A DNA stretch of 63,195 nt, filler included, from Salisapilia sapeloensis CBS 127946 (lineage: Eukaryota; Protista; Oomycota), in NCBI GenBank assembly GCA_023334545.1. It is 10 parts of 10 records of this genome, joined end to end, with 100 filler letters (N's around TTAATTAATTAA, not from the genome) between each part and the next. Parts side by side here need not be neighbours in the genome. Positions count along the whole stretch, not along the records: positions 1 to 21,313 come from JAADVB010000288.1; 9 more parts are not named here. One strand, written 5' to 3'. The notes below the pieces were generated by a model. It was given only the letters and a program-made list of their open reading frames with translations. It did not search any database and was not told the DNA's origin. This document shows positions 1,123 through 21,313 of the stretch, in pieces. Position 1 is the first letter of the stretch, and each line of letters opens with the position of its first letter. Made by a program: the position numbers and the translations under genes.

Positions 1123-3390
1123 CTATTGCATCGGGACTACTTGGAGCTGATACACTTGTAAAGCCTGAGCTCGGTAGCAAGCAGCAGAGTGCAATAGGTA
1201 AAACTCCCACGTCCTTTTAAACGACCACGGCAGCGATCGAATCTTTTCCGCTCGGCGCAATCGCTCCCCGTGCGAAGTCGACCTCGCACGCAGTCGATCT
1301 AACGTCGCTTCGATCTCTTCATTCGTCTCAGCCGTCACGACTTCTTCGTCACTTTCGTTCCACCGCTCTTGGAACCGTCGATTCCATTCCAAGAACGTCT
1401 TCTCGTAATGGTCCGAGTACGACAGGACAGCTCGTAGTCGAAAGCTACTTTCTCGAAGCAAGAAACGAACGTGTGGGAGCGTGACTGCGATGCACGGGAA
1501 GGAACTATGGATGTACTTGTTCGTCCAAAGGTGGGTCGTGACGACCGACCCTGGACACGCAACAAATTCAAGTAGGGCCAGTCCGTCCGGTGTTTGGAGA
1601 CGGCGCAAAGTGCGAAGGAACCAGAGCATTTGCGGACGAGTGAGGGTTTCGAGAAGACCACTGCAGGTGATTCGTGTGAAACTCTTGTCTTCCAGGTTGC
1701 TTAACGCGGATAAGAGCTACATGAGAGAGATGTGTTAATAAAGGAAGAGAAGAACAATTGGTGAAGAGTATACTTTGGAAGGAGATGGAGCGACGATGAA
1801 CTCCATTCGATCAGCGACTTGGAGTTCCGAAGCGAACTTTCGAGCGTGGACTAGTTCCTGGATGGAGCTGAGGATAGACACGACGTGTACGTTGGGAGAT
1901 GACTCAGCCAAGTAGCATCCAACACCACCCCACGATCCCATACTCAAGTCCAACACTCGATGTGTCTTATCCTAATACAATTTGTATGGTTAATCATCAT
2001 CAAGTAGACAAGTAATATGCATTCTGTACCTCTAGTCGCAGTTTTTCCACAATATTCCGGAGCTTCCGTTCTTGTGCTTCCTACACATATTATTAATACT
2101 TTTCTTTTATGACAATAATTGAGAGAATATACTTCTAAAGTAGTCACTCCTTCGCTCCAGATACCAAAACTTTGGTGTAGATATCGGTCCATGTAATCCT
2201 TTCGGAATTCCGGGTTTAAATCAAATTGCTCTGCGACTGGACCGACGACGAGACCGACGGATGACGGAGCGTAGTTGAAGATACGTGCGGCGAGAGCGAC
2301 GATACGAGCGTTCCAGGATCTATACATCTCCCGGCGTGCTTCCAATGGTACGGTCATGATGCCAGTGATGACTTCGTCCAGGGGACGGTGGGAAGTAGCC
2401 CACAGACCACCGACATAGGACTCGCCGATCGCGATGAGACCGTCTCGCATCCAATCGAGCCAAAAGGCATCATTCCGAACGATTAAATCCTATGATAAAG
2501 CATATAAAGTACTGAATAAAAGTATCGATCGATGGTTAAATGTACCTGCGACGGCGTGATACCACCTGCGACGAGTAGATGTGCCATAAATTGCTTTGCA
2601 TTGCGCCGTAGTCGTGGTAGAATCAAAGATCTTAAAGCTTGTAGACTTATTAATATCGATCCAGCTAATGCAGTCGCAAAGTAGACCCAGAACGATCGCT
2701 ACATGACAAATCGTCTCTTGTCATTCAGTTATCTCGAGGATGGGAGAGAAGGATGCGTACCTGATCTGCTAGTACACTGAAGAGAGGAACGAGGAAATTG
2801 AGCATGAGCTCCATCTTATAGGCCGCATTCCAAAAGTTACGCGAGCGTGGTGGATTGAATCGATAGACGTGATCAGCTCGAGGGAAGAAGCCTGGTCCGG
2901 CGACGAAATAGCTCCAGACCTGAGATGCTCTATATGATGCATACTCTTTAGTCACTGCAGCGTAAAGATGAGAATACAATTGTACTTACGCTAGTGCTGG
3001 GATGCTCATCCAGATACGGACGAGTGGGAGGTAGCATGAGATGAGCATCATGGGCGCGACCAGGTGGATGAGTACGTCGACAACGCGAGCGAAGAGACCG
3101 AGCGACATGGAGCTAGCCCAATTGCCGAGCCATCCGTTGAGGAGAGCAGAGAAGGCTGTTCGATCGAGTGCGCGTAGTGAGTACCATCCGACCATGATGG
3201 TTGTGCCGGTCGTGGTCGCGATCCCGAGCGCTGCAGGAGAGGCGACGACGTGGGCTGCGACGGTGTACACGAGCCATGTGGAGGTGTACATGAGCTTAAC
3301 GCCGGCCATAGCCGGTAGGATCACGACGGAGAAGAGCAAGGCGATGGCCAAGGCCGCATCGGCCCCCGGGCCTCCTTCCGCTTCCAGCAT
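1123..3390 (-). CDS. Fusion of an N-terminal AIG1/FAR-17a-like multi-pass membrane domain with a cyclopropane-fatty-acyl-phospholipid synthase-like methyltransferase (about 640 aa, 7 exons)
   Basis: GT-AG exons 3390-2990, 2929-2761, 2698-2546, 2489-2133, 2080-2030, 1971-1774, 1716-1123 join into one open frame of 1923 nt. CFA-like motifs: DGLIAIGESYVGGLW, EAQERKL, VLDLSMGSWGG, DHYEKTFLEWNRRF, WEFYL, VYQL. Confidence 0.85.
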
Positions 3391-4601
3391 TCTTCCTCCG
3401 ATGCACACGAGCGTTTGAGCGACATCCGGCCTGTCACAGTGGCTTGACTTGGTTTCACTATGGCACTTCAAAAAGAGGAACTCGAGTCGATCGAGTGTAC
3501 GCTCGTCCAATTAGCGCCGACTTTCGGTGGAAATGGGTATTTGGAGAGGATACACGAAGCGAAGAGATGTACGAAAAACGTTTTTTTTCTCGACACGTGT
3601 GAATTGAGGGGATTTATATCCATGTAGATGGGAATCTTGGTAGATTTTAAATGATGTGAAAGGAAGACGATGATGGAAAGGAGGAGAGAGCTGCTTTGAC
3701 CATGTCGTATCATTTGCGTTTCGTTTCAAGATTGTGGTAGATACGACGGCACGAAAGACATACTTGGAAATGATGGGGTCACCGGTCTTTCGTGTTAGAG
3801 GCTGCCATTGCGTTTAATACGTCAAGCACGGCAGAGTGCACGAATAGATTCGCTATTATTCAAATACCATGTCCCTTCAGGCCTTGTATTCGTGGGCAAA
3901 ATGTTTGCTGGAACGCCACGACTTACTTTCGGTTGTAGATTTGTATGCAATGACCGGTTTACTTACATATCATCAACGTCTAAACTAAACACCCGATTAC
4001 TCGACGCAAGTTGGGTGGATCACACCCAGACATGTATGCAGAGTATAGACACCAGGTATCTATTGGACACTTCGGGCTCATTTGTGTTGTTGATCTACCT
4101 GAAAACAAGCAAATTTAAACACGTACGACATGGTATGCAAATACTGGCAATCTAAATATCTCTTTACTAAGGTTCAAGTTGTAGTCAGTTGAGCTAGTTG
4201 GAACTTCCAAAGTTTCGGTCGAGCGACGACGCAAGTTCATCGAATCGTAAGTTTAGTGTACATGCTCCGATAGGACGATGCATTTCGATCTGGATCAGTA
4301 TCTTTGTCATTCAATCAGCCTCTATGAGCTTTCCATGCCGGCAGCCATAACTCTACTTCAACCTATACTCCTAACGATTCAAGTGTAACCGTCGTTTTTA
4401 CAGTATTATGACATTGCTACTTGTCAAATACTCGATCAACATTCATCGGCACCAGACGTCAACCTTTACAAGTACAGTCAAAAACGACAAGATGCATGTG
4501 CGTGAACAGCAACTGATTCTCGAATTTGTTTATCCGGTTTTCTAAAGCCAGTAGTCTAGCTAGATGCTATCTAGTCACTTTCATATCCTCTTCAAGCGAC
4601 A

Positions 4602-7600
4602 TTAGTGACCTCCAGTGAAGTTATTGCTCGTGGCGTCATTCAACGAGTCGTTCGCGAGCTTAAGCAAGTCATTGTTCGAGTATCCGCGACGAGCCCTGTT
4701 ATTCAAGTCCCTCTGCGCCGCTTGTTCTTCCGAATGTCGATGCTCGTCCTGAATAATCACGCTCAGTCGATTCGACGCGTCTTGCAACGCCGTCAACTCC
4801 GTTTCACTGACGTTCCGCATCGCTTTGAGCGCGTTGTCACTAAGCGTGTGCGTGATGGCACTCGAGTCATGATACTGTCCATTCTTCTCTTCGCCACTAT
4901 CACTGCCATTCGCCAGTGTAAGCGCCGAGATCACTCGCTGTTGCTCGACAATGATGTCACGCATCTGGTGCAGAGACATATCATCTTGATCGTCTCGTCC
5001 TTGGTTCGTACGAAGAATGTCTTCGATGACGACACCTCGACTCAAAGCGTTGTTGTACAACAACCAGGTCTGGATCTTACCTGGCACATACAACGCCGAG
5101 AGAAGCAGGATGAAACCAAAGGAAACACCACCGAGGAGAACGTCATGGACATAGTAGAAGCTCGAGACACTACGAGAAGTTGCGCCGAAGACGAGTAGAG
5201 ACCAAGACGCAATTGCAGCAGCCAAGTAGATCATACTGAGCATACAGCGGAACATACCGTCCACGTACATGAAGAGCGTGATAATACCACCAGCACACAC
5301 GACGATCCAGATGGACTTGAGGAAACGCACGAGACCAGTTTCTCCTTGTCTTGTGTTAAAGAACAGAGACGAGATCGTCACGTAGACCAGAGCGATGCCA
5401 AAGGTGAGGGCAAACGGAAGCCACGTCTTCTTGTGCAAGAGCGAGTGGTATGAGTCGTTCGCAGCGAGGATCGCAAGAGCTAGACACATGTAGAGCACAC
5501 CCTTGGCAGCAATACAGAGCTTAGCCCACGTCCGTAGTTTCGAAAAGTAGGCATTCTCTTCTCGGAACCACGCTTCCCACGATTGTTCCGGGTTCCCTCC
5601 CGTTCCACGCATCCACTTGAGCCATACACGCAGATCGTCCGTGACGTCTGCCCATTCAAACGCGAGTGGGTTAAACCAGAACGGCGAGAAATACCAGGAG
5701 AAGGCAACGAGCCAGAGAGACCAGGTCATGGCAAAGTACTGATGTCCGATGGTGAAGAGCCAATAGACACTGAGACCGAACGCGATTTCAACAGCAGAGT
5801 ACAAGTGGCTGCTAGCGTAGAACCGATAGAGCTCATCGAATCGCGAGTGCTTCGTGACAAAGCCACGACCGGTCGCTCGGTACTTGGCACCACCGGCCAA
5901 GATGGTTTGACCGTAGTAGAACCACTTGGTGCCGATGTGGAAGAGGAAGTAGAACGGACCGCCAGTGACGACGATCATGAATACTTCCTTCAACGCTGCC
6001 TTGAACCCTCGTTCGACCGATATCGTCGCCATGAGCGGCGCAGTCGTGAAGAATGCGACGCATCCAAGCATGACTTGTAGGTTCGACAGCAGCACCGGTT
6101 CTCTTCCACCCACTCCTTCGAGTGCCATGAGAGCTCGGAAGATGTTGCAGTAGAGGAGGATGTATACCGTCCAGATGATGAGGGACGTCGTAAGGTAGAA
6201 TCCAACGTGGTTGTAGTAGAACGACAAGAGTTTGAAGAAATCAAGACGCTGGGCAATACGGTAGACGTCACGCGAGAGCGACTGCTCTGCAGCACCTTGC
6301 GCCAATTTCGCTTCGAACTTGTAGATCTGCTGCATACCGACATCTCGTCCCTTTCCAGCCTTGACGTACTCTGGGAACGCCACGGTGCCACCACGAAGAC
6401 AGTTGTTGTAGCCAGCGAAAATGTCTTCCGACAGATTGATACCTTTGCTTGCCTTGCTGATACCTCCACGTGTGATGAAGAAGAGTTTGTTAAAGACATC
6501 TGGATGACCATAGTGCATACGCACTCGCAGTGGATTCGTTAACGTCCGTTGACCAAGCGTGACGAAACTCGTTTCTTGGAGAGCCATGTAGTTCGCGAGG
6601 GAACTGACACTTCCAGTGAAAATATGCTCCGGCAGTCCGACAATTGTGGTCGGACGATCGGCTGAGCCAGAGTCAAACTCTTCCAAGAGATTACGCATCT
6701 TCAAAGACTCTTCAATGTACCCGTCTTGGTTCATATCAATCGTCTGCAAGTGTTCCCCTCGCGTGAATACGATCGCAGCGTTCTGATTCTCTGGCTTACC
6801 TTCTCCGAGGATCGGATTACCAGGCAATCGAATGCGATACACTTCTTCCACTTGTCCTTGCGTCTCACTTCCTTTGATCAAGACAGCAAAGTACGACTGT
6901 TCCTTTTGATAATTCACGCGAACTTCATCAATGTACGCGACACGAAGGTTCGGGAAGCGATGCAAGAGGTACTCGATATCTTGCGCTCTCGGATCGTTAT
7001 TCCGCTTTTGACGACCATATACTTGACACGCGACGACGTAGGTGAATTTCGTTCGTACGAGCTCTTCAATCTTTTCCGTAGGTACTTGCTCGATCTCAGC
7101 TAAGAGACGAATCGCAGCTTCACCGTACATCATGCCTTGCACCGTACGAGCAAGTGTCTGACCACGTAGACTAGCCCATAGTCGTAGCTCAGCCGCTGTA
7201 TCCGGGTTCTTCCACAAGTTCTTCTTGGGCTTCACGCGCTCGATAAAGTTCTCCCAGTCTTGTTGATAGACTGTTTGTAGGAACAAGAGCGTGTGGACGT
7301 CTAATCCATCTCGCTTCGACTCGAGATCTGTCTTGGAGTACAAGACGTCTTCAGCATAGAATGGCGTCATGACACTCCACGACTTCATCTCTTCCAGCAA
7401 CGGTGCGAGAGGCATGTCCATGAAGATCGAGTTCACAAAGAAGAGAAGACGTCTACGCGCATCATACGATCGAGGCTCCGCGTCCACTTTCTGTAACGTC
7501 AGGAGACCATGCAAGTGCTGTACGACGACATCTGCGTGCTTTTCAAACGCCGTGAGCGTCAATTGTTCACCAGCGTACTCGTCATCCCAGAAGAAACCAC

Positions 7601-10600
7601 GTTCTTGCGTCAGGATCCACGTGAGTCTATCAGCTAGACCACGGCTTTCAGCTTGGAGGTTATCAATGTCGTCCAAGCGCGTTAGCATGGTCTTTCCGAG
7701 ATTGAGGAACGTCCGGAGCTTGTCTCGGATCTGTACCAAGTGCGTGCCTGGGATGACATGCGACCCACCGCTCTTGCTCTTACTATCCTTCGGTTTCGAG
7801 TTACCTTGTTGCATGGCCGCAATACGGCCGATACCAGCGCCACGACTACGTCGAGGGACGGTGCCACCAAGAGATGACAGACCGGTGGTACTCGCAGACT
7901 TGGTCAATCCACTAGAGCTTGCTCCACGAAGACCTTGTTGCTGCGGGAACTGGTAGTTGGAATAGTCCGATGGATTCTTACGTACTGGAATGTACTTGGC
8001 GTTCTTCTTCCATCCACCAAGGTTGGAGCTTAGAGAAGATAGCAAGTCTGCTAATGCAAGCGCAAAGGGTCCGATCTTTCGAAGGTTGAGCGCTCGGAAA
8101 GCACCACGAGAAGCCCATGAGTTTAGTGTGCTGCAGATAAACTGAACGTCATTCGAGTGACAAGGTCCGAGGACGTTAATGAGCACCCATCTCGCAAGCT
8201 CCCACACTTCTTCCACTGCTTCTTCAAACATGACGTTTTCACCTAGAATCTCCAAGAGCGCGTCTTGTAGTGTTCGTTCCGTGACATCTTTCTCTCGACT
8301 GTAGACGTTTTCAACAGCATTACAGAACGATTCAAAGCATCCAGCGAGTTGGAATTGTGGCAAGTAGATCTCACGCTGGTATCCATCAAGACGTTGGAAG
8401 TGGAGAAGAGACTTTTCCTTGTTCGAAATCAAGTCATCTGCACGCATCGTATCGATCACGACATCCCATGCAACAGAGAAGGAGATCCACTTTTGACGAC
8501 GAGCTTGTAGGATCTCGTCTGCAGTCTGCTTGCGACGCGAAAAGGAGAGCAAAGGTGTCTGATCCGACTTGCCGTTCGTGCGTTTCATGGAGGAAGTTGC
8601 TGGGTCGCCAGTCACTTGGTCTAGAACTTCATGTCCTCGAATGGACGATACAGAGCCGTAAGAATCATGTCGAGACGACTTGTGTAGCTCACGTCCGGTC
8701 TTGGACTGTATCGAAATCAGCTTTGCGTTAAACACATCTGCGGCACGAGCAAAGGCAGCCCGAACGCGTGTAAAGTTACGAATTTCACCGATACGTGACG
8801 AGAATCCGACAAACGTGCCGGTGAAAGCAAGCCAGATACTGTTCCAGATCGTCATGTCGACGCAGTAGACGAGGAAGAATGGCATCCAATTGAGGAAGAT
8901 GAGGAAGGCTGTTGGGAGCATACCGACATTGTTCTCGACATGATCGGCGTACAACAAAAAGGTTGGTACGACGACAGGAGCAATCTCGAACTTGTAGCTA
9001 AAGAAGAGTTTCCACGTAAGGAGTGTGATCCAGAAGACGTAGTATCCAAAGCTTTGGGATGCAGTATCCAGGACGTTATCACCGACGTAGAGCCTGTTCA
9101 TAGGACTGAGCAAGTCGCGTGCGTAGGCGACGGGACCCCAGTGCGTGCGACGTAGCCAGTTCATGCACTGCGGCATGATCTGAAGGACGCTGTTGAAGAG
9201 TCCTGGTAGGTGGAGGAAGAGCATCGTGCTATAGTACGTCGCCCACCATGCACCTCCAAAGTTCAGTGCTTGCCAGTACAAGGCGATGCTGATGACAGTA
9301 AGACACAAGTGAGACAGCAAGAGAAGTGCATGTCGGACGAGATCGGACGTAGCCATACGAGCGTCGTAGATGGAGAAGATGTCGAGACCACCACGTAGGC
9401 CGTGCAGTACGAACGGCGTGATCAAGGTGCTCGAGATGACTTGCAAGGCATCCTCCAGATCCATTTCTTGCTTATTGGCAAATGCAAGAGCGACGAGGAA
9501 GTGGAAACTGACGACGTGGAACTCAAAGAGACGGAAGAACGCACGCAGAGATGCGAGCCATGTACGTTTTTCCAAGAACGACTTATCACATGATTCGCTC
9601 AGTTTCTCCGCAACACTTTTCGGTCCATTGGATTGAGAAGTGGTTTGGAAAAAGCCGGAGCGGTGTTTCTGGAAGAACGCAGGGTTTGGAGACGCGGCAA
9701 TCTCGTTCACGGCTTCATACTTGTAGTCGTACTCGAGACACGAAGCGTCCCAGAAGAACTCGTTAAAGTCATCGTACGTACGTCGATCTATATGATCGGC
9801 GTTACCGCCCATTTGAGACTTCATCAGACCGTAGATGGGCGTGATGACCGTATCTAAGAAGTGCCCTTCTTCACGCGTCGTCTGTCGTACACCAGGATAC
9901 TCTTGCTTCATCTTGTGGAAGAGGAAACAGAGGGATTCAGGGACATGACGCAAGTTACTAGCTTCACCCCAGATGAAGAAGAAGAGACATAGATCGACGG
10001 CAATTTCGTCCACTTCGGAAAGTCCGCTACGTGACGGTCGCGACTCGTTCCAACAAAGAGGTTCGACACGAAGTTTCATGCACCAGTTCTGGTAATTACC
10101 AAACACTTGGGCATGTAAAGCACGATATGCGTTTGCACCTTTACGACTGTTGTTCGCCAATAGGACAATAATGTGCTCTGCTTGGTTTCGAAGGTTTGTC
10201 GTTTGGAAACCAAACGTACGTTGGACGTTCGTCGCAGTCTTGATAACGTTACCAAACGGACGAAGGTGAGCTGGTAGAGCGTCTGGCGAAAAGTAGTTCG
10301 ACTTGTCGTTGTGTGCACTTTCGTCCTGATGACACCACGCACGAGCGTCGGATCCAGCCGAGATCGACGTGGACTTTGCTTTGGCGGAACGCACTTCAAA
10401 GACCGTTTTACCATGCGTCGAGTAGAACTGGAAGACTACACCAAGGATAGCGACACCAATGAACAACGCGTACAACAACAGACACTCATCTCCAGTACAC
10501 ACATGCTGGCTCTTGGGCTCTACGCCGCCAAGGAACAGACCTGATAGCTCCCAGACGTTCGCAGCAACGTCTCCAGAGTCAAACCAGTACGACAACGAGG

Positions 10601-12416
10601 TCATGATCGCTAAAGCGCCTAGACCAGACGTCGCAAAGATCACAACGTGCTTTTTCTCAATGTTGCACAGTGGAGCACAGAGCCCGCAGGTCACAAGGAC
10701 AGCTACGAGACAACGTGCGAGGACTAACGGAAGGAATTGACCGATCAGCAGGCTGGCGAAGAGTCCTAGTAGCGCTCCTAATGCATACGTAGGGAAGAGC
10801 GCACAGATACCAGCAATGACGATGCCACTCATACAAGCGATGAAGACTTGGATCCAGGCCAAGTCATCCGCCGAGACAAAATTGAATGCACCATAGAACC
10901 CAGCGACAAGTAGCAAAGAACTCGTGTAAAACGTAGCGGACTTGGCATGGTTGACACCGCCAAAGGCGATCGCGGCACCGATGACCAGGTTCAAAAACGC
11001 GAACAAGTGTGTGAGTGCAGGACCAAGCTGCAGGGACACGTACCACGGCAGGCCATAGTCTACCGGATGCGTGTACACCCATGTTTGTGTCGGGAAGGCC
11101 TCTGGGTCACACCCGATGGACGTGTAGTTGTTCGGGTTACCTTGATAGACTCGTACGTAGTCAATGGTAAAGTTGCTTGGCCAGATAGAGTCACAGATCT
11201 GTCCGTGGCATGGCGGAGAGAATTTTTCGGACACAGCAGTACTTAAAATGAGGTAGCTTGGCTCCACCGGGATCATACGTGGTGGCACATTGTTGGACCA
11301 GACGTTCAGCGCGGAGCCTGGGATCTCAAAGAGGAAGTTGTAGTCCAACCACCATCGAATGTGACCGTCTGGACCGGGCTGCCAATCGAGCTGGTACAAA
11401 TGGTACGCAGTGAACGCGTTGGACTCGAGCTGGGTTAAAGCCGAGATGGCGTCTAGTCCGTTTTCACCGTAATAGTCGCTGTTGATGCGCGTAAAGTTAC
11501 CGTACTTGAGTCCTTGGTACCACTGTCCAGGGCCTGGCAGCGTCTCGGAGGCAGGACGAAGGTCGTCCGTGAGACTCGGTGTGATCTGGAGCGACGTGGA
11601 GATGAAAGCAGGCTTGTCTCGCGCTCGAATCTGTCCTTCCATGACGTCAATTTCAGTCGAGCCACGACCTTGGTAAGGGTTGAGGCCGTAGTTGACAGGA
11701 TACGAGTTCGGGTCGTGCTTATCCGTGAGGTTACCACAAGCACTGATCTGTTGCTTCTTCTTCTGCTGCTTTTCAATGTACGGCGCGCAGTAGTCAAAGC
11801 TCCATGGCCACTTTCCGTCTTGCGAGTCCGTGAAAGCCGCTCGACCGAGGTTGCCCATGATCCAAATGGCTGGCCAAGTACCTGGGATACCCCACTTGCC
11901 TGGCAAAATGGCTTTGACTTCGACAAAACCACCAGTGTAGCAAAACTTGTTCCATGTCTGGACACTTCCACTGACGTAATGCGCGCCGCGGTACTTTTCC
12001 TTTGGCTTGCTGGTCGTGATAATCAAGTTTCCCTTATCGACTTGGACGGCACTCGGTAGAAAGTAGTGTTGACCCATATTGGTTTTATCTCGAATGTCCA
12101 CGGCAGTCCATTTCGGATCAAAGCCAGCTTCGAACGTACGCTTACTGTCGTTGAACTCATCGGAGAAGATCAAGTCGTACTCCATCGGGTTGCCCGTGAA
12201 AATGTCGTACGGACCTTGCGGGACTTTAAACTTGTAAAACTCTTTTGGTGTCTCTGGATCGATCCAGTTATCCGTATGCAAATCATCTTCGTCTTGCACT
12301 GCAAGGGGAACGAGTGCATGGACGGAATGGAGGAAGCAAAGGGATAGGAGTAGGAGCTGACATGCTAGCAACCGGTGCGATCTTCCTCCGTGAGCAGGAG
12401 GAGAATACCGGTGCAT
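4602..12416 (-). CDS. 1,3-beta-glucan (callose) synthase GT48 fused to an N-terminal KRE6/SKN1-like GH16 domain and a DUF4203/TMEM198-like membrane segment (2604 aa, no introns)
   Basis: First ATG at 12416 (the track start at 12578 is GTG), followed by a signal-peptide-like stretch. GH16 motifs WPAIWIMGNLGRA and EIDVME. FKS1 motif WGEASNLRHVPE. GT48 motifs LRGQTLARTVQGM, GEGKPENQN, IDMNQD, EHIFTGSVSSL, HYGHPD, NLSEDIFAG, KGRDVG. Confidence 0.95.
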   Translation of the reverse strand: MHRYSPPAHGGRSHRLLACQLLLLSLCFLHSVHALVPLAVQDEDDLHTDNWIDPETPKEFYKFKVPQGPYDIFTGNPMEYDLIFSDEFNDSKRTFEAGFDPKWTAVDIRDKTNMGQHYFLPSAVQVDKGNLIITTSKPKEKYRGAHYVSGSVQTWNKFCYTGGFVEVKAILPGKWGIPGTWPAIWIMGNLGRAAFTDSQDGKWPWSFDYCAPYIEKQQKKKQQISACGNLTDKHDPNSYPVNYGLNPYQGRGSTEIDVMEGQIRARDKPAFISTSLQITPSLTDDLRPASETLPGPGQWYQGLKYGNFTRINSDYYGENGLDAISALTQLESNAFTAYHLYQLDWQPGPDGHIRWWLDYNFLFEIPGSALNVWSNNVPPRMIPVEPSYLILSTAVSEKFSPPCHGQICDSIWPSNFTIDYVRVYQGNPNNYTSIGCDPEAFPTQTWVYTHPVDYGLPWYVSLQLGPALTHLFAFLNLVIGAAIAFGGVNHAKSATFYTSSLLLVAGFYGAFNFVSADDLAWIQVFIACMSGIVIAGICALFPTYALGALLGLFASLLIGQFLPLVLARCLVAVLVTCGLCAPLCNIEKKHVVIFATSGLGALAIMTSLSYWFDSGDVAANVWELSGLFLGGVEPKSQHVCTGDECLLLYALFIGVAILGVVFQFYSTHGKTVFEVRSAKAKSTSISAGSDARAWCHQDESAHNDKSNYFSPDALPAHLRPFGNVIKTATNVQRTFGFQTTNLRNQAEHIIVLLANNSRKGANAYRALHAQVFGNYQNWCMKLRVEPLCWNESRPSRSGLSEVDEIAVDLCLFFFIWGEASNLRHVPESLCFLFHKMKQEYPGVRQTTREEGHFLDTVITPIYGLMKSQMGGNADHIDRRTYDDFNEFFWDASCLEYDYKYEAVNEIAASPNPAFFQKHRSGFFQTTSQSNGPKSVAEKLSESCDKSFLEKRTWLASLRAFFRLFEFHVVSFHFLVALAFANKQEMDLEDALQVISSTLITPFVLHGLRGGLDIFSIYDARMATSDLVRHALLLLSHLCLTVISIALYWQALNFGGAWWATYYSTMLFLHLPGLFNSVLQIMPQCMNWLRRTHWGPVAYARDLLSPMNRLYVGDNVLDTASQSFGYYVFWITLLTWKLFFSYKFEIAPVVVPTFLLYADHVENNVGMLPTAFLIFLNWMPFFLVYCVDMTIWNSIWLAFTGTFVGFSSRIGEIRNFTRVRAAFARAADVFNAKLISIQSKTGRELHKSSRHDSYGSVSSIRGHEVLDQVTGDPATSSMKRTNGKSDQTPLLSFSRRKQTADEILQARRQKWISFSVAWDVVIDTMRADDLISNKEKSLLHFQRLDGYQREIYLPQFQLAGCFESFCNAVENVYSREKDVTERTLQDALLEILGENVMFEEAVEEVWELARWVLINVLGPCHSNDVQFICSTLNSWASRGAFRALNLRKIGPFALALADLLSSLSSNLGGWKKNAKYIPVRKNPSDYSNYQFPQQQGLRGASSSGLTKSASTTGLSSLGGTVPRRSRGAGIGRIAAMQQGNSKPKDSKSKSGGSHVIPGTHLVQIRDKLRTFLNLGKTMLTRLDDIDNLQAESRGLADRLTWILTQERGFFWDDEYAGEQLTLTAFEKHADVVVQHLHGLLTLQKVDAEPRSYDARRRLLFFVNSIFMDMPLAPLLEEMKSWSVMTPFYAEDVLYSKTDLESKRDGLDVHTLLFLQTVYQQDWENFIERVKPKKNLWKNPDTAAELRLWASLRGQTLARTVQGMMYGEAAIRLLAEIEQVPTEKIEELVRTKFTYVVACQVYGRQKRNNDPRAQDIEYLLHRFPNLRVAYIDEVRVNYQKEQSYFAVLIKGSETQGQVEEVYRIRLPGNPILGEGKPENQNAAIVFTRGEHLQTIDMNQDGYIEESLKMRNLLEEFDSGSADRPTTIVGLPEHIFTGSVSSLANYMALQETSFVTLGQRTLTNPLRVRMHYGHPDVFNKLFFITRGGISKASKGINLSEDIFAGYNNCLRGGTVAFPEYVKAGKGRDVGMQQIYKFEAKLAQGAAEQSLSRDVYRIAQRLDFFKLLSFYYNHVGFYLTTSLIIWTVYILLYCNIFRALMALEGVGGREPVLLSNLQVMLGCVAFFTTAPLMATISVERGFKAALKEVFMIVVTGGPFYFLFHIGTKWFYYGQTILAGGAKYRATGRGFVTKHSRFDELYRFYASSHLYSAVEIAFGLSVYWLFTIGHQYFAMTWSLWLVAFSWYFSPFWFNPLAFEWADVTDDLRVWLKWMRGTGGNPEQSWEAWFREENAYFSKLRTWAKLCIAAKGVLYMCLALAILAANDSYHSLLHKKTWLPFALTFGIALVYVTISSLFFNTRQGETGLVRFLKSIWIVVCAGGIITLFMYVDGMFRCMLSMIYLAAAIASWSLLVFGATSRSVSSFYYVHDVLLGGVSFGFILLLSALYVPGKIQTWLLYNNALSRGVVIEDILRTNQGRDDQDDMSLHQMRDIIVEQQRVISALTLANGSDSGEEKNGQYHDSSAITHTLSDNALKAMRNVSETELTALQDASNRLSVIIQDEHRHSEEQAAQRDLNNRARRGYSNNDLLKLANDSLNDATSNNFTGGH

Positions 12417-12583
12417 GATCAAATCAGCTGTAGGAAGGAGGTAGGAGGTGAAGACAAGTTCTTGTTGCTGGATCGAATGAAAGCAGGTATCCAAAGTAGC
12501 TAGTAGAAAGGGGAGAATGCCTTTTGGCAAGGAGGCGGACGAAACGCTTCTGCCAACGGGGCAGAGATCTTGCTCCACTCGAT

Positions 12584-12875: not shown

Positions 12876-14954
12876 ATGTTGCGCCGGACACTGACGAGCT
12901 CGCTCCGCCGCCGTAGCGCACTGCAGAGTGCCTTCACGGGCAATGCGAACGTGTTGCAATCGACCCGATCCTTCTCATCCAACAACATCCCGACCGACAA
13001 GCTCCGTATGTGCTCTCGAGCTCCCTCGTGCCAGCCGTTGGCTAGTCAACGCGGCCATCTTCATGCATGATGTCACTAACGTTTCCATGCTTTTTAGGCA
13101 ACATTTCTGTGATTGCTCACGTCGATCATGGTATGTGATGCTATCTATATCATCCTATCTCTATCAAATGCTCATGCGACTGCATAATCAGGTAAAACGA
13201 CATTGGTGGACGAGATGCTCAAGCAAGGTGGAGCTGACCTCGAGTCGGATCGAGTGATGGATTCGATCGATCTCGAGCGTGAGCGAGGTATCACGATCAT
13301 GTCCAAGTGCACTCGTATCGAGTACAAGGACCACGTCCTGAACATCGTCGACACGCCTGGCCATCAAGATTTCGGTGGTGAAGTCGAGCGTGTACTGTCT
13401 ATGGTCGACGGTGTCGTGCTCGTCGTGGACGCGACGGAGGGACCGATGTCGCAAACAAAGTTCGTGCTCACAAAGGCATTGCAACGTGGTCTACGACCTC
13501 TTGTGGTTATCAACAAGGTCGATCGTGAAACCAGTCGACTTAACGGTGAAGTCGAGAACGAGCTCTTCGACCTGTTCGTTGCTCTAGATGCGACGGATGA
13601 GCAGCTCGATTTTCCTATCCTGTACGCTTCTGCGAAGCAAGGATGGGCTGTTCGAGACTTAGACAATGCCGATGAACAGCGCAATAGTATCATCCCACTC
13701 CTTGATGATATCATCGAGTACGTACCAAAGCCGGAAGCGGATGCGACAGCTCCGTTTGCCATGGCTGTGACTATGATCGGACACGACCCGTACGTTGGGC
13801 GTCTGGGCACTGGCCGTATCGAGTCTGGTACGATCAAAGTGGGCGATGCCATCCACGTCGTGAACCGCGATGGCAAGAAGCTCGAAGCTGGAAAAGTGAC
13901 CAAACTATATGTTACCCGTGGTGTCGTTCGTAGTGAAGTGGACTCTGCTTCGGCTGGTGACGTAATCACGGTCGCTGGTGTCAATGGCTACGTGTCCGAC
14001 ACGATTTGTGACCCGTCTGTGTCGGCACCGATTTCGTCGCCAAAGTTGGACCCGCCTACGATCTCCATGACGTTTGGTGTGAACGACTCGCCGTTGGCTG
14101 GCAAGGAAGGCAAGTACCTAACTTCTTCTCACATTAAGCAGCGTCTGCAGAAGGAAACCGAGAACAACGTTGCGGTGTCTATCTCTAACAGCTCTAGCTC
14201 CGAGGCGTTTAACGTCCACGGTCGTGGAGAGCTGCAGCTAGCTATCCTGATCGAAGAGATGCGTCGTGAAGGATTTGAGCTGAGCGTCTCTGCGCCGCAA
14301 GTGCTGTTCCAGTACGACCCGGAGACCAAGGATCGTCTAGAGCCGGTGGAAGAAGTGACAATCGATGTCGATGCCGACTACTCTGGCTCGGTCATTGACA
14401 AACTATCGAACCGTGGCGGAGAGATCATTGAGTTCAAGGAGATGCATGACAAAGTACGTCTGCTCTTCCGTATCCCGAGTCGATGCCTCATGGGATACCG
14501 AAGTGAGATCAAGACGGATACGCGCGGAAGTGGTGTCTTGCACTCGATCTTCCACGGGTACGAGCCGTTTGCTGGTGACTCGAGTATCCCGTCCAAGGGT
14601 AAGCTCATTTCGTCTGCTAAGGGCATGGCGACAGGGTATGCTTTGAACTCGCTCGAGGACCGTGGTGAGATGTTCGTCAAGCCTGGTGACGAAGTGTACA
14701 CGGGCATGATCGTCGGTGAACACAACCGACCGGTGGACATTGAAGTGAACCCGACCAAGGAGAAGAAGTTGACGAACATGCGTGCGTCCGGTACGGATGA
14801 GAACATCAAGCTGGCGCCTGCGAGGTACATGTCATTAGAAGACGTTGTGACGTATATCGGATCGGACGAGATGATCGATGTGACGCCGACGACCATTCGT
14901 ATGCGCAAGCGTGAGCTGTCTGCAAACGACCGCAAGCGCACACAAAAGAAATAG
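12876..14954 (+). CDS. typA: TypA/BipA translational GTPase, probably mitochondrial (3 exons)
   Basis: Exons 12876-13005, 13098-13130, 13192-14954 rebuild [18 protein letters not shown]. Also [33 protein letters not shown] and [15 protein letters not shown]. The N-terminus is Arg/Ser-rich with no acidic residues, like a presequence. Confidence 0.95.
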
Positions 14955-17043: not shown

Positions 17044-18081
17044 GTCGGAGACGATGAGGATACGACCTTGTACTTGAAGCGATTTATATACTTTATGTTG
17101 GCTATAAACTTGCTTGATTTACTTGTTTTTACTCTCGTACGAGAGTTTTTGACAAAGCTTTTCATGTCTTGCATAGACGATCTTGAGAATAGGATGCAAT
17201 GTATGCATGTAACATGCCGTCTTCGTAGCATGACCGTCTCCATTGCCGTTGGAGCAATAGAGATCTAGTGCATGATCTAGTGGCATAGCGCATGAAAGCC
17301 TAGTCCGGATACTGCGAAAAGGATACTGCTCAGGCGAGGCGAGTACACAACCGAATGCATGTAGAAACCGTAAGCTATTCCCTATGCCGAAAAGACGTGG
17401 CAGCTCATCTGCTGCTTTTAACAGTAAAAGGACTTTCAATCGTCAGCAAAAGGATCTGAAAGGACAAAGTTACTCTTCCTTATCGAGCGTAGTGTCTTTC
17501 CGGAGGGTGGAAAGACAAGGGTAGAATACGCTGGCATTGCGAAAGCAGTGCCATTAGATCGAGAAGTGAGTGCATTACCAGAAGCGAACAGACATCACAA
17601 GAGCAAGATAGCAAAGGTGTACTTATGTTACGACCTAGTGACATGATCGTCACTTCAATCGATGGACTCACTATGCTCGAAGCGCCACCACATACTCATA
17701 GACTCAAAGATCGTCGAGCTAGTCGTCATAGCCGTCGATATTTGCAATACCAAGTTTAATAACCCGAAATATATTTATACGATCGTCTTGAAGTCTTGAC
17801 TGACATGAATGTCACGTCTGCACGTTATCTATCTACTGTCAATTGCACGAAAGCAAGTCGTGTCTATCGTACTGGTCTGGCAGCACGTCTTCAACACGAA
17901 AGACTTCCTACCCCTGTCACGTCGTTCGATTGTGGCTTTCGACTAAAAAATTGTATAGTGATATCAGTCGATGCCATGTGGACAGCATGGCCTCTATCGC
18001 AAGCTACCTGGAGCCAGAGCCGTTGTTGCCCGTACCGTTCGCAGTAACGAATCGGCCTCGAGGTGCACACATACCTGCAAG

Positions 18082-19575
18082 ATGGCCACGAACACGTTTG
18101 ACGGAGAGTCCACGGCTCGAGCGAACGGAGCAAGCACTGAGTTTGACGTGGATAACGTAGCGTATGGTGCTGAGAGCACGAACCGAGCTGTGGATGTTGC
18201 GTCGGCTCCATTCGCAACGACGGACCCGGCAGATGAGAAGGACAATCTAGATGACATGCGTTCCAAGCTGGCTCAGAAAAAGAAGCCGATTTACGCTGGA
18301 CTTGCCTTCCTCGTCGTCGTCGTGATCTGTGTCAGTGTCGGTGTCAGCACCGGTGGTTCCTCCAAGGCCAATACCGAGTCGAAAAACGAAAACACGCCTG
18401 CACCGGAGCCGAAGACGACAGCTCCTTCTACTAGCGTCCCGGACGATGAAGGTCTTGTGAACCCCTACGGTTCATCCGCCAGTACATCCGCCAGTACATC
18501 GGCATCAGCGTCCTCGTTCTCTTCTGCCAGTAACTCGTCTGAAGGTTCCCAAGTCTGGAACGAAGACTGGGTCGGAGGCGACTATGACATCGGTAGCAAT
18601 GCTTCTGCTTCTGCTTCTGCCTCTGCATCTTCCTCTGCATCGGCTTCTGAACCACCATCTACAACCGAGTCACCGGCTACCACTGCACCTTCGACGCCTG
18701 AACCGACCACGACCAAGCCGCAAGAACCACCTGCCGAGTACACGGACATTGGCTTCGACTGGACGAACAAGGACAACTGGGAATACGCCGATGGTAGTGG
18801 CATTCCCAATGGCATGTTCGGTGACGACGGCATCAAACTCACGAGCAGTAACAGCAAGCAACCCATCCGGACGCATAAAGGATGGGGTGGTGAACGCGTC
18901 ATTCTTATTGAATGGGAACGCTCTTCCTCGAGCGACACGAACATTTGGATGCTCAACACCAAATTGCAGAGTCAATTCGGCAAAGGCAATGGTTGGCCGT
19001 ACTGGGGTGAGCTCGACATCTTCGAGATGTTCACACAGGACACTGTCGATCGATCTGGGTACAGCTTCTCTGGCTTCGGCGGTTTCTCCGACGTTGCTAG
19101 TTATGGGCAGCTCACTCTGCACATGGGTCCAGCAGCCGAGAACGGTGACCCGTGCTTCTGCCCAGCAAGTTTCTCCAAGAGTGCCTGGTACAAGAACATC
19201 CAACCGATGGTCTCTGGCTGCTCGGCGCAGTTCTCTAACGACGAGAAAAATTCGATTGCGACAGTCCTCGGCCGTGATGAAAACGGTCAGTTCTTGCAGC
19301 TTATCCAGAATCCGACTGTGACCAAGGGAGGCAAAGTGAACGATCAGGACACATACGACGTTACTCAAGGCAGTGGAGCCGTGACGGCCAAGATCTACAA
19401 TAACAAGGACCAATTCTGGGGCGCTGATGCATCGTCTCCATGTGCATCGGGAGGCGGTCACGACCCAGACACTGGATTCCCATTCTTCGAAGAATTCCGC
19501 ATCATTTTGGAAGAGCAGAAGAAGGATTCCGACGCTTGGTTCAAGGTGACCAACATCAAGGTGCTAAAGAAGTAG
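18082..19575 (+). CDS. Type II membrane GH16-like glucanase/transglycosylase with Ser/Thr/Pro-rich stalk (497 aa)
   Basis: ATG 18082; single TM IYAGLAFLVVVVICVSVGV; SASAS/EPTT linker; catalytic-type motif GWPYWGELDIFE (ExDxxE). Confidence 0.8.
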   Translation: MATNTFDGESTARANGASTEFDVDNVAYGAESTNRAVDVASAPFATTDPADEKDNLDDMRSKLAQKKKPIYAGLAFLVVVVICVSVGVSTGGSSKANTESKNENTPAPEPKTTAPSTSVPDDEGLVNPYGSSASTSASTSASASSFSSASNSSEGSQVWNEDWVGGDYDIGSNASASASASASSSASASEPPSTTESPATTAPSTPEPTTTKPQEPPAEYTDIGFDWTNKDNWEYADGSGIPNGMFGDDGIKLTSSNSKQPIRTHKGWGGERVILIEWERSSSSDTNIWMLNTKLQSQFGKGNGWPYWGELDIFEMFTQDTVDRSGYSFSGFGGFSDVASYGQLTLHMGPAAENGDPCFCPASFSKSAWYKNIQPMVSGCSAQFSNDEKNSIATVLGRDENGQFLQLIQNPTVTKGGKVNDQDTYDVTQGSGAVTAKIYNNKDQFWGADASSPCASGGGHDPDTGFPFFEEFRIILEEQKKDSDAWFKVTNIKVLKK

Positions 19576-20157: not shown

Positions 20158-21313
20158 GTGGCTGATGCATTCAAAGGTTTCTTCGAAAACCTCATGCTTG
20201 CCCATTACTCGTCCTATATGCAGTCGAGAAAGCGCTTGACTGTCGGACCTGCGACGAAACCGATCGCGACTAAAGCTAGTGACGCTAAAGGTGCCGCTTC
20301 TCACTTCGTGTCCGACGCGAAGAATGCCGTTACGCCGCTCGGGTTACCGCCGAATGCCATCCATGACGAAGCCGCTGACGCCGGAGTTACCGTACACGAT
20401 GTGACAGGGTCGATGACCCTTTTGGAGTTTCTTAAGAATGACTCCAGTGATGACGAAACGGATGATGCATCCACCGTGTCCAACTCGATGGCCTCTAGTG
20501 CTCCTTTGATTCGATCAATGAATAGTGGCGATACTCGCGTGATCGCATCCGATGCGACGCAATCGATCGTACCCTCAAAGCTACTGGGTGCTGAGTCTAG
20601 TGACAACCACTTCGGAACTAACTCGGTTGCATCCGAGTCGACGGAGTCAATCTCTCTACTGGAGCTACCTGAGGACGAAGACAATGCCCGATCCACTGTA
20701 TCGGACTCGACCGACTCGATCGCACTTTTGGAGACGCTGGACGCTGTGTCTAGTGATGATGAAGTCGAAACCAACTCCGCTGCAACCAAATCGATGGCTT
20801 CTAGCCGTCCTTTTGAATTTCCCGTGAATGACGACAATGCCAACGCCATCGTGTCCGAGTCACCACAGCCGCCCACACTCTCTGCGAGTCTAGAAGACGA
20901 TTCTAATACAAACGACTTCGAAACTAGCTCGATTATGTCCGACTCGACGGGGTCGATTTCGCTCTTGGAGCTACCTGTGGGCAATGACGAAGACGAAGCT
21001 GCATCCGACTCGACAGAGTCCATCGCACTATTGGAGACTCTGGACACTGAGCTTGGTGACGACAATTTCGAGACCAGCTCCGTTGCATCCGACTCAGCGG
21101 ACTCTATCGTCTTGTTGGAGCTACCTGCGGATATCAACGATGACGACACCGCATCCAACGCTTCGGGCTCGATGAAGTCGATTCCTCTCCTGGAAGACCC
21201 CATGTTTAGCTATGACTGCTTCATCAAGAAGCTGTACAAAGATGCAGCCAACATTGCCAAGAACTTTGATGCGAGAGCTGCGAGTGTCTCCAGCTCGACG
21301 AAGAAAGCGCCAA
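20158..21313 (+). CDS. Acidic Ser/Asp-rich repeat protein, 3' truncated by spacer, start uncertain
   Basis: Open for about 385 codons up to the contig end, with recurring SISLLELP and SIALLETLD motifs. The same frame has stops at 20035 and 20140 downstream of an ATG at 19897. Confidence 0.55.
20400..21200 (+). repeat. Coding tandem repeat with a period of about 150 nt (50 aa)
   Basis: LLELP motif starts at 20650, 20956, 21106 (spacing 306, 150); LLETLD motif starts at 20719, 21022 (spacing 303); degenerate units lie between. Confidence 0.7.

What the first reader, a model, noticed from the sequence alone, without database searches (positions are those of the whole stretch)
2546..3390. AIG1/ADTRP (FAR-17a)-like membrane hydrolase domain fused to a cyclopropane fatty acid synthase-like methyltransferase
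Seen: splicing seven GT-AG exons gives one 640-aa protein whose first ~210 aa are multi-pass membrane. By-eye alignment to recalled human AIG1: KLMYTSTW vs WKFLTFID (catalytic Thr region), GTTIMVGWYSLRALDRT vs GVFVVAVFWIIYAYDRE, DVLIHLVAP vs NHGMHTTVLP (catalytic His), HVYRF vs WVYPF. Established: AIG1/ADTRP are Thr/His transmembrane hydrolases of fatty acid esters of hydroxy fatty acids, and CFA synthases methylenate acyl chains of membrane lipids. Inference: one polypeptide may couple acyl-chain release or transfer to SAM-dependent chain modification. I do not recall this architecture being described.
Basis: partly seen in the sequence, partly recalled or inferred. Interest (0 to 1): 0.75.

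Follow-up and report, generated by a model that had tools for sequence, protein, structure and literature searches.

The report
Oomycete membrane-anchored lipid methyltransferase, not AIG1
This is one real seven-exon oomycete gene that joins an undescribed seven-helix membrane domain (no detectable kinship to AIG1/ADTRP) to a strongly diverged cyclopropane-fatty-acid-synthase-type methyltransferase, which makes it a testable candidate for the unidentified enzyme that methylates oomycete membrane lipids.

Summary
Seven GT-AG exons on the minus strand (3390 to 1123) give a 640-aa protein. Spliced transcript contigs from three samples, 100% identical to the window, remove all six introns at exactly the predicted junctions and join the membrane part to the methyltransferase in one molecule.

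The fusion is conserved end to end in at least 15 annotated oomycete species (580-643 aa). It also occurs in a divergent marine metagenome lineage.

The C-terminal 400 aa is a CMAS/CFA-synthase-family domain with a non-canonical active site. Only the Glu and Tyr of the bicarbonate ligands remain, the His is replaced by Glu, and the SAM motif I carries an insertion.

The AIG1/ADTRP reading of the N-terminal ~235 aa is not supported:
- No Pfam match to AIG1 or the related TMEM164, GPC1, YwaF and YpjA families.
- The proposed Thr is Asp or Gly in Saprolegniales.

The domain is an orphan family (25 cluster representatives among 1.84 billion) with invariant Trp39, Asp105 and His109.

My best guess is a membrane-embedded lipid C-methyltransferase, possibly the unidentified oomycete sphingolipid C9-methyltransferase. 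That function is inferred, not shown.

The parts
1123..3390 (-). Whole coding region of the 640-aa fusion protein (7 exons, 6 introns)
   Evidence: Assembly and translation. Spliced contigs X1-X3 cover it without mismatch. It aligns over residues 4/11-636 to full-length oomycete orthologs at 53-60% identity.
2990..3390 (-). Exon 1, residues 1-133 plus 2 nt: helices 1-5 and the start of helix 6 of the membrane domain
   Evidence: The intron position is shared with other oomycetes (ORF calls P0001-P0008 end with ...PALM at the same point).
2761..2929 (-). Exon 2, residues 134-190: end of helix 6, the conserved PPRSxxFW loop and helix 7
2546..2698 (-). Exon 3, residues 191-241: last transmembrane helix, continuing as the linker helix into the methyltransferase
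   Evidence: Its equivalent is conserved (64% identity) in Nothophytophthora, between two genes that the public annotation wrongly separates (L002 2219-2386).
2133..2489 (-). Exon 4, residues 242-360: N-terminal subdomain of the CMAS-type domain (WLDWM...IGESYVGGLW; FDLNPEF...QSFGIW)
   Evidence: Alignment to bacterial CFA-synthase-family proteins and to E. coli CFA synthase 6BQC.
2030..2080 (-). Exon 5, residues 361-377
1774..1971 (-). Exon 6, residues 378-443, with SAM motif I
1123..1716 (-). Exon 7, residues 444-640 plus the stop: core of the CMAS domain
   Evidence: Pfam PF02353 CMAS, E 5.9e-10, 39.3 bits against a cut-off of 27.
3283..3285 (-).
   Evidence: It is the second residue of helix 2. 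It is T or S in Peronosporales and Pythiales but D or G in Saprolegniales.
3274..3276 (-). Codon Trp39, invariant in the family
   Evidence: Alignments A1-A3.
3064..3078 (-). Codons Asp105 to His109 (DVLIH): an invariant Asp-x3-His pair in the middle of the 29-residue helix 95-123
   Evidence: Invariant in 19-21 sequences, including both repeats of a dinoflagellate protein.
1924..1956 (-). Residues 383-393, VLDLSMGSWGG: modified SAM-binding motif I (canonical VLDIGCG-WGG)
   Evidence: First Gly replaced by Ser, plus a one-residue insertion. Saprolegniales have DLHLDSAGG and similar.
1648..1650 (-). Codon Glu466, equivalent to E. coli CFA synthase Glu239 (bicarbonate ligand), retained
1567..1569 (-). 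Codon Glu493, at the position of E. coli His266 (bicarbonate ligand); Asp or Glu in every member of the clade
3321..3425 (-). Out-of-frame upstream ORF (34 codons, ATG at 3425) that overlaps the main start codon at 3390
   Evidence: Transcript contigs X1 and X2 extend upstream of it, to 3537 and 3440.

Best explanation
Shown: a single seven-exon gene is transcribed and spliced into one mRNA for a 640-aa integral membrane protein. Residues 1 to about 235 form a compact bundle of seven transmembrane helices plus one short amphipathic helix. This domain belongs to an undescribed family found almost only in oomycetes. It has an invariant Asp105-x3-His109 pair in the middle of one helix, an invariant Trp39, and two conserved loops (LRxxDRxAF and PPRSxxFW). 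The last helix runs straight into a CMAS / cyclopropane-fatty-acid-synthase-type class I methyltransferase domain (residues about 242-640). The active site of that domain is derived: the Glu239 equivalent is kept, His266 is replaced by Glu, Cys139 by Phe, and motif I carries an insertion. Inferred: if the methyltransferase is cytosolic, where S-adenosylmethionine is available, all the conserved loops face the same side. The membrane domain would then bind a membrane lipid and present it to the methyltransferase, which adds a methyl carbon from SAM to a chain double bond. Because the bicarbonate site used for cyclopropane ring closure is remodelled and an acidic residue sits where the His was, the product is more likely a methyl-branched olefin than a cyclopropane. 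The best candidate reaction is C9-methylation of Delta-8-unsaturated ceramide, which gives the 9-methyl sphingoid bases known from Phytophthora and Pythium. I put the gene structure and domain identities at about 0.95, an active lipid C-methyltransferase at about 0.55, and the C9-methyltransferase assignment at about 0.3.
For: Gene model and ORF. Single spliced transcript across all junctions in three samples at 100% identity, plus a related organism. Purifying selection against that relative: 29 synonymous versus 11 non-synonymous differences, and 16 versus 4 in the membrane part. CMAS domain: Pfam 39.3 bits for exon 7 and 85.7 bits for the ortholog P0011; E. coli CFA synthase 6BQC at E 3.3e-21; structure TM 0.80 to bacterial CFA-synthase clusters. 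Fusion conserved in Phytophthora, Peronospora, Peronosclerospora, Plasmopara, Pythium, Globisporangium, Saprolegnia, Aphanomyces and Thraustotheca, and in a divergent marine metagenome contig, L007. Membrane domain: confident models with pTM 0.77 and 0.82; invariant W, D and H. It also exists as membrane-only paralogs placed directly upstream of the fusion gene in Peronospora and Nothophytophthora, and as a tandem duplicate in a dinoflagellate, so it is an autonomous module. Active-site mapping: with the E. coli ligand list taken from PMC3132707. Oomycetes make 9-methyl-branched sphingoid bases (PMC11376384 and bioRxiv 10.1101/2021.10.18.464766). No held paper that mentions a C9-methyltransferase concerns an oomycete gene: the single paper holding both terms is on a fungal endophyte. 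The fungal enzyme is a membrane-bound CFA-synthase relative (own knowledge: Ternes et al. 2006, J Biol Chem 281:5582). The nearest clusters by language-model features include fungal CMAS proteins of about 450 aa and one cluster automatically named 'sphingolipid C(9)-methyltransferase' (a lead only).
Against: Motif I is degenerate. The second Gly is Asp, Gln, Ala or Glu in Saprolegniales and in L007, and L007 also lacks the Glu239 equivalent, so the domain may not bind SAM in every lineage. No fungal C9-methyltransferase sequence could be obtained, so the clade's relationship to those enzymes is untested; its closest non-oomycete relatives are bacterial, at 27-30% identity. Plant cyclopropane synthases work with Gln in place of His266, so losing the His does not exclude cyclopropanation. 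I could not show that this is the only CMAS-family gene in oomycete genomes. No coordinates were available, so the position of Asp105 and His109 relative to the methyltransferase active site is unknown.
Confidence: 0.5

Rival explanations
1. One reading: the membrane domain is a very remote member of the AIG1/ADTRP (wider AIG1/TMEM164/GPC1/YwaF/YpjA) superfamily of transmembrane acyl hydrolases and transferases. A nucleophile on helix 2 and a His on helix 4 would couple acyl-chain release or transfer to methylation on the same polypeptide.
Confidence: 0.1
2. The membrane domain is only a passive anchor. The protein is an ordinary cyclopropane fatty acid synthase acting on phospholipid acyl chains, as its database names say.
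For: CMAS family membership. Plant cyclopropane synthases tolerate changes at His266 and Cys139. The E. coli enzyme also needs an N-terminal part for membrane binding (own knowledge).
Against: A simple anchor would not need seven helices with invariant intramembrane Asp and His residues and conserved loops, nor exist as separate paralogs and in a dinoflagellate without a methyltransferase. Most residues that are invariant in bacterial CFA synthases are lost. Cyclopropane fatty acids are not a known feature of oomycete lipids (own knowledge).
Confidence: 0.15
3. The methyltransferase fold is a pseudoenzyme. The protein would then be a lipid sensor, transporter or scaffold that uses a CMAS-like lipid-binding pocket without transferring methyl groups.
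For: The motif I glycines are replaced in Saprolegniales and L007, and the Glu239 equivalent is lost in L007. Meanwhile the non-catalytic C-terminal motif RTWEFYLLHxAA is the best-conserved part of the domain.
Against: In the window's own lineage and in all Peronosporales and Pythiales, the central Gly of motif I, the GG pair, the Asp and the Glu239 equivalent are retained. The domain is under purifying selection.
Confidence: 0.2
4. The membrane part and the methyltransferase are two adjacent genes wrongly joined, as annotated in Nothophytophthora sp. Chile5 (205 aa and 393 aa).
For: One public annotation splits them.
Against: Spliced contigs from three samples cross the exon 3-exon 4 junction within one continuous ORF. 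The 'intergenic' gap in Nothophytophthora holds the conserved exon-3 equivalent in frame. At least 15 species are annotated as fusions.
Confidence: 0.02

Closest known systems
Bacterial cyclopropane-fatty-acyl-phospholipid synthase (E. coli Cfa, PDB 6BQC; Pfam CMAS PF02353)
   Same: Same fold and family for residues about 242-640, including the small N-terminal subdomain (GESYxxGxW), the FDRI...E strand, WxNKYI and the C-terminal RxWEFYL motif.
   Different: Only 27-30% identical. Bicarbonate ligands Cys139 and His266 are replaced (Phe349 and Glu493). Motif I has Ser for the first Gly and a one-residue insertion. There is a 9-residue insertion where the bacterial DYR motif lies, and a 35-50-residue insertion before the last helix. 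The first ~30 residues of the bacterial enzymes are replaced by a 235-aa integral membrane domain.
Fungal sphingolipid C9-methyltransferase (Mts1, Smt1, FgMT1/2)
   Same: A membrane-bound CFA-synthase-family methyltransferase with an N-terminal membrane region (own knowledge: Ternes et al. 2006). Its product, the 9-methyl sphingoid base, also occurs in oomycetes.
   Different: The fungal enzymes have about two N-terminal hydrophobic segments, not a seven-helix domain (own knowledge). No specific sequence relationship was shown here; the best non-oomycete hits are bacterial.
AIG1/ADTRP FAHFA hydrolases and the wider AIG1/TMEM164/GPC1/YwaF/YpjA superfamily
   Same: A multi-pass lipid-facing membrane domain of about 230 aa with an invariant intramembrane His.
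   Different: No profile match, fold similarity at noise level, the candidate Thr is not conserved, and there are seven transmembrane helices plus a short amphipathic helix instead of a six-helix core.
Plant cyclopropane synthases (Sterculia, cotton) with an N-terminal oxidase-like domain
   Same: A eukaryotic CMAS domain fused to a large N-terminal extension and bound to membranes, with His266 also replaced.
   Different: The plant extension is a soluble oxidase-type domain (own knowledge), not a polytopic membrane domain.

Membership tests
AIG1/ADTRP (Pfam FAR-17a_AIG1, PF04750) | Significant match to the family profile | tested here: not met
   hmmscan at E<=10 of the window's exons 1-3, of 8 orthologs and paralogs, and of all 21 members of alignment A1. 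There was no hit to PF04750, nor to PF14808, PF10998, PF09529 or PF07187. HMMER's filters drop most matches above E of about 0.1.
AIG1/ADTRP (Pfam FAR-17a_AIG1, PF04750) | Conserved Thr nucleophile (AIG1 T43, ADTRP T47) on helix 2 | tested here: not met
   Thr36 is T or S in Peronosporales and Pythiales, but D or G in all Saprolegnia and Aphanomyces orthologs. ADTRP T47 and H131 are from PMC8123165; AIG1 T43 is from my own recollection of Parsons et al. 2016.
AIG1/ADTRP (Pfam FAR-17a_AIG1, PF04750) | Invariant catalytic His on helix 4 | tested here: inconclusive
   An invariant His109 exists mid-helix, but its equivalence to the AIG1 His could not be established.
AIG1/ADTRP (Pfam FAR-17a_AIG1, PF04750) | Thr and His adjacent in three dimensions | not testable with these tools
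   The structure tool returns no coordinates. In sequence, Thr36 is the second residue of helix 2 and His109 is residue 15 of a 29-residue helix.
CMAS / cyclopropane fatty acid synthase family (PF02353) | Profile match above Pfam's gathering score | tested here: met
   Exon 7 alone scores 39.3 bits against 27. Orthologs P0011 and P0027 score 85.7 and 71.5 bits.
CMAS / cyclopropane fatty acid synthase family (PF02353) | CFA-synthase fold | tested here: met
   For ortholog P0011 residues 246-620: TM 0.78-0.81 over 322-336 residues to bacterial CFA-synthase clusters. PDB 6BQC at E 3.3e-21.
CMAS / cyclopropane fatty acid synthase family (PF02353) | Canonical SAM motif I (VLDxGCGWG) | tested here: inconclusive
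   The window has VLDLSMGSWGG: the Asp, one Gly and the GG pair are kept, the first Gly is Ser, and one residue is inserted. Motif I is degenerate in Saprolegniales and L007.
CMAS / cyclopropane fatty acid synthase family (PF02353) | Bicarbonate ligands of cyclopropane synthases (E. coli C139, E239, H266, Y317) | tested here: not met
   In the window these are Phe349, Glu466 (kept), Glu493 and Tyr547 (kept here, Phe in many orthologs). The ligand list is from PMC3132707.
Sphingolipid C9-methyltransferase (functional class) | Membrane-bound CMAS-family methyltransferase in an organism group that makes 9-methyl sphingoid bases | tested here: met
   Architecture. 9-methyl bases in Phytophthora infestans and Pythium.
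Sphingolipid C9-methyltransferase (functional class) | Orthology or specific clustering with the fungal enzymes | not tested
The nearest listed relatives are bacterial.
Sphingolipid C9-methyltransferase (functional class) | Methylation of Delta-8 ceramide | not testable with these tools
   Needs enzymology or genetics.

The most novel reading that the evidence does not exclude
The seven-helix domain is itself a new kind of lipid-handling membrane module, built around an intramembrane Asp-x3-His pair. It would extract or orient a Delta-8-unsaturated ceramide and feed it to a re-engineered, bicarbonate-independent CMAS domain. This single polypeptide would then be the missing oomycete sphingolipid C9-methyltransferase, the maker of the 9-methyl sphingoid-base pattern that plants sense through the RDA2 receptor kinase.
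Probability: 0.2. Interest if true: 0.8.

Novelty: new variant of a known kind. Interest (0 to 1): 0.55.

Why it matters
Oomycetes include major crop and fish pathogens. Their 9-methyl-branched sphingoid bases are a molecular pattern recognised by plant immunity, yet among the papers searched here none that mentions a C9-methyltransferase concerns an oomycete gene. This gene is conserved across oomycete orders. It combines a lipid methyltransferase fold with a membrane domain absent from Pfam and from solved structures. That gives a concrete candidate to test by knock-out and lipidomics, and a new membrane-protein family to characterise. If the methyltransferase proves inactive, it would instead be an example of a lipid-modifying fold turned to another use.

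Tried and rejected
1. AIG1 membership: Pfam scans, a profile search of PDB sequences, Foldseek against PDB, two full VIA-align scans and two Atlas fold searches gave nothing above noise.
2. Families known to sit beside bacterial cfa genes (DUF2878, DUF1295, DUF1365). I expected one of these from memory, but none was hit.
3. Language-model look-alikes for exon 1 and for the ortholog's N-domain: no usable hit.
4. Profile word search with alignment A2 to reach distant relatives: only oomycete sequences came back.
5. A second copy of the membrane domain in the window, as in the tandem paralogs of Peronospora and Nothophytophthora: none found.
6. The two-gene model: rejected.
8. Two literature look-ups failed to give details of the fungal enzyme, and nothing on Saprolegnia sphingoid bases was found.
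9. Steps I could not run. The spliced 640-aa protein could not be handed to the database tools because it has no reference; exons and the ortholog P0011 (54.5% identical) stood in for it. There was no Thr-His geometry check because no coordinates are returned. There was no comparison with an actual AIG1 or fungal C9-methyltransferase sequence.
Full report
**The observation**

The gene lies on the minus strand. Joining 3390-2990, 2929-2761, 2698-2546, 2489-2133, 2080-2030, 1971-1774 and 1716-1123 gives an uninterrupted 640-codon ORF. The six introns are 52-62 nt long and all have GTA...(T/C)AG ends.

Public data confirm the model. Contigs of three runs from one study (X1-X3, 2086-2224 nt, no mismatch to the window) skip 57, 58, 52, 56, 62 and 60 nt at precisely these junctions. 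On the plus strand the skipped ends read CT..AC, which is GT..AG on the coding strand. Each contig runs through all seven exons. Sequence that lacks the introns must come from mRNA, so the membrane part and the methyltransferase are on one transcript.

A related organism (X5, 95-99% identical) shows four of the same junctions. The one at intron 3 was laid 4 nt off, with 4 letters of its own between the two sides. Of its 40 listed differences, 29 are synonymous and 11 are not; in the membrane part the split is 16 to 4. ATG 3390 is the only in-frame ATG upstream of the conserved sequence. An out-of-frame 34-codon upstream ORF (ATG 3425) overlaps it.

**Conservation of the fusion**

A search of 1.84 billion cluster representatives with exon 1 found only 25 proteins. 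Among them are full-length fusions from Pythium oligandrum (620 aa) and Aphanomyces euteiches (586 aa). Their clusters add A. cochlioides (579 aa) and the full-length A. astaci protein (588 aa).

A search with the methyltransferase half of the Pythium protein added Phytophthora sojae, P. ramorum, P. infestans, P. fragariae, P. pseudosyringae, P. megakarya and P. nicotianae. It also added Peronospora, Peronosclerospora, Plasmopara, Pythium insidiosum, Saprolegnia diclina, Thraustotheca and A. stellatus, mostly 580-643 aa.

The window's protein aligns to these orthologs over residues 4/11-636. Identity is 53-60% to Peronosporales and Pythiales and 34-41% to Saprolegniales. The host is therefore an oomycete that is none of the annotated species.

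Nothophytophthora is annotated as two genes. However, the 'intergenic' gap holds the conserved exon-3 equivalent in frame (L002 2219-2386, 64% identity), so that split is an annotation error. A divergent marine metagenome contig (L007) has the same architecture, at 35% and 29% identity for the two halves.

**The C-terminal domain**

Exon 7 alone passes Pfam's CMAS threshold (39.3 bits against 27). Orthologs score 72-86 bits. E. coli CFA synthase 6BQC is the best solved relative (E 3.3e-21). The ortholog's domain superposes on bacterial CFA-synthase clusters at TM 0.80.

The active site is not canonical. PMC3132707 lists the E. coli bicarbonate ligands as C139, E239, H266, I268 and Y317. Mapping through the printed 6BQC alignment and a 23-sequence alignment gives:
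- C139 corresponds to Phe349.
- E239 corresponds to Glu466, which is retained.
- H266 corresponds to Glu493, which is Asp or Glu in every member of the clade.
- Y317 corresponds to Tyr547, which is Phe in many orthologs.

Motif I changes from VLDIGCG-WGG to VLDLSMGSWGG. In Saprolegniales and L007 the central Gly is also lost, and L007 lacks the Glu239 equivalent. Most residues that are invariant in bacterial CFA synthases are gone, while RTWEFYLLHxAA is invariant in the clade. The closest non-oomycete relatives are bacterial, at 27-30% identity and E around 1e-24. The most distant full-length oomycete ortholog, by comparison, scores E 2.5e-71.

**The N-terminal domain and the AIG1 claim**

Two AlphaFold2 models of the Pythium ortholog were confident: residues 1-245 (pLDDT 88.6, pTM 0.77) and residues 1-215 (pLDDT 86.3, pTM 0.82). 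Both show helices that map to window residues 5-28, 35-49, 52-75, 79-93 (short, amphipathic), 95-123, 126-144, 164-190 and 193-233. The last helix continues into the methyltransferase.

Alignments of 19-21 family members have only three invariant columns: Trp39, Asp105 and His109. Near-invariant positions form the motifs ALGxAT, GWY, DRxxF and PPRSxxFW.

All Saprolegnia and Aphanomyces proteins start just before this point with ML(A/G)CSYxxD, lack helix 1, and carry Asp or Gly there.

The AIG1 tests were all negative or at noise level:
- No member hits PF04750 at E<=10.
- No member hits the related families defined by Reed et al. (bioRxiv 10.1101/2022.07.06.498872): TMEM164 PF14808, GPC1 PF10998, YwaF PF09529 and YpjA PF07187.
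- A profile search of all PDB sequences at E<=10 found nothing, and Foldseek found nothing at E<=0.001.
- The best ESM Atlas fold is an unnamed 158-aa actinobacterial membrane cluster (TM 0.45 by the query, 0.59 by the target). No AIG1-type family appears among the rows shown from the 30 nearest models.

The AIG1 reading is therefore not supported. What survives is the bare pattern of an invariant intramembrane His plus a variable hydroxyl residue on an earlier helix. I give a very remote relationship about 0.1.

**Is the membrane domain just an anchor?**

Probably not. Membrane-only paralogs exist. In Peronospora destructor and Nothophytophthora one sits directly upstream of the fusion gene. 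A metagenomic oomycete contig shows the same Bin3-gene-then-paralog order. A dinoflagellate (Polykrikos) transcript encodes two tandem copies without a methyltransferase, and both keep the Asp-x3-His pair. The window has no second copy.

**How it most likely works**

What is shown:
- One polypeptide.
- A polytopic domain with conserved intramembrane polar residues.
- A derived CMAS domain under purifying selection.

The rest is inferred. If the SAM-dependent domain is cytosolic, the helix order places the R-x-x-Y-T start of helix 2, the LRxxDRxAF loop and the PPRSxxFW loop on the cytosolic face next to it. Asp105 and His109 would then lie roughly a third to half way into the bilayer. I propose that the membrane domain binds and orients a membrane lipid whose chain double bond is methylated by the CMAS domain.

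The bicarbonate site is remodelled and a carboxylate sits at the His266 position. Deprotonation may therefore give a methyl-branched olefin rather than a cyclopropane.

Oomycetes (P. infestans, Pythium) contain 9-methyl-4,8(10)-sphingoid bases, the pattern sensed by Arabidopsis RDA2. In fungi this branch is made by a membrane-bound CFA-synthase relative (Ternes et al. 2006; own knowledge). The one held paper containing both 'C9-methyltransferase' and 'Phytophthora' is about a fungal endophyte, not an oomycete gene. That makes sphingolipid C9-methylation the most attractive specific function, at about 0.3.

Against this reading:
- Motif I is degenerate in Saprolegniales.
- There is no tested link to the fungal enzymes.
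- I could not show that this is the only CMAS gene in oomycetes.
- Plant cyclopropane synthases work without His266.

**Novelty and verdict**

The fusion is already present in public proteomes under automatic names. Its N-terminal domain has no Pfam family, no solved or recognisable fold and no literature that I could find, and its methyltransferase is a distinct derived clade. I class it as a new variant of a known kind.

Noticed in passing
window 4602-12578 (-): An intronless ORF of about 2650 aa joins an SKN1/KRE6-type beta-glucan synthesis domain (PF03935, E 1.6e-73) to an FKS-type 1,3-beta-glucan synthase (PF02364, E 6.6e-193; FKS1_dom1). It is a large fusion typical of oomycete wall synthesis and lies head-to-tail next to the finding's gene.
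   Followed up: partly
window 13203-14954 (+): TypA/BipA-type translational GTPase (BipA_C, GTP_EFTU, EFG_C). The ORF as listed starts at TTG, so the true start is probably in an upstream exon.
   Followed up: partly
window 17971-19575 (+) and 20158-21313 (+): Two ORFs have no Pfam match. One is a 534-aa Ser/Ala/Thr-rich protein with a hydrophobic segment. The other is an acidic protein built of repeated 'SDSTxSIxLLE' units that runs off the end of the piece.
   Followed up: partly
window 3321-3425 (-): A 34-codon upstream ORF (ATG 3425) is out of frame with the main start codon of the fusion gene and overlaps it. It lies inside the 5' leader covered by transcript contigs X1 and X2, and could damp translation.
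   Followed up: partly
L003 4001-4764 and 4961-7204; L002 534-1172 and 1510-3671; L005 2586-4732: In Peronospora destructor, Nothophytophthora and a metagenomic oomycete contig, a membrane-domain-only paralog sits between a Bin3/dsRBD RNA methyltransferase gene and the fusion gene, and a WW-domain gene follows. The window lacks this neighbourhood.
   Followed up: partly
P0056, P0058, P0062 (Globisporangium splendens, G. ultimum, Phytophthora boehmeriae): Public gene models of about 1000 aa merge the fusion gene with the neighbouring WW-domain or Bin3 gene. Nothophytophthora splits it in two. Automatic annotation of this locus is therefore unreliable in both directions.
   Followed up: partly
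P0033 (Polykrikos kofoidii transcript, 554 aa): A dinoflagellate protein holds two tandem copies of the same membrane domain with the Asp-x3-His pair and no methyltransferase. It is the only member found outside oomycetes. Contamination or gene transfer was not examined.
   Followed up: no
L007 204-2441 (marine metagenome ERZ23498527): A divergent fusion (35% and 29% identity) has lost both the motif I glycines and the Glu239 equivalent. It may be a natural catalytically dead version.
   Followed up: partly
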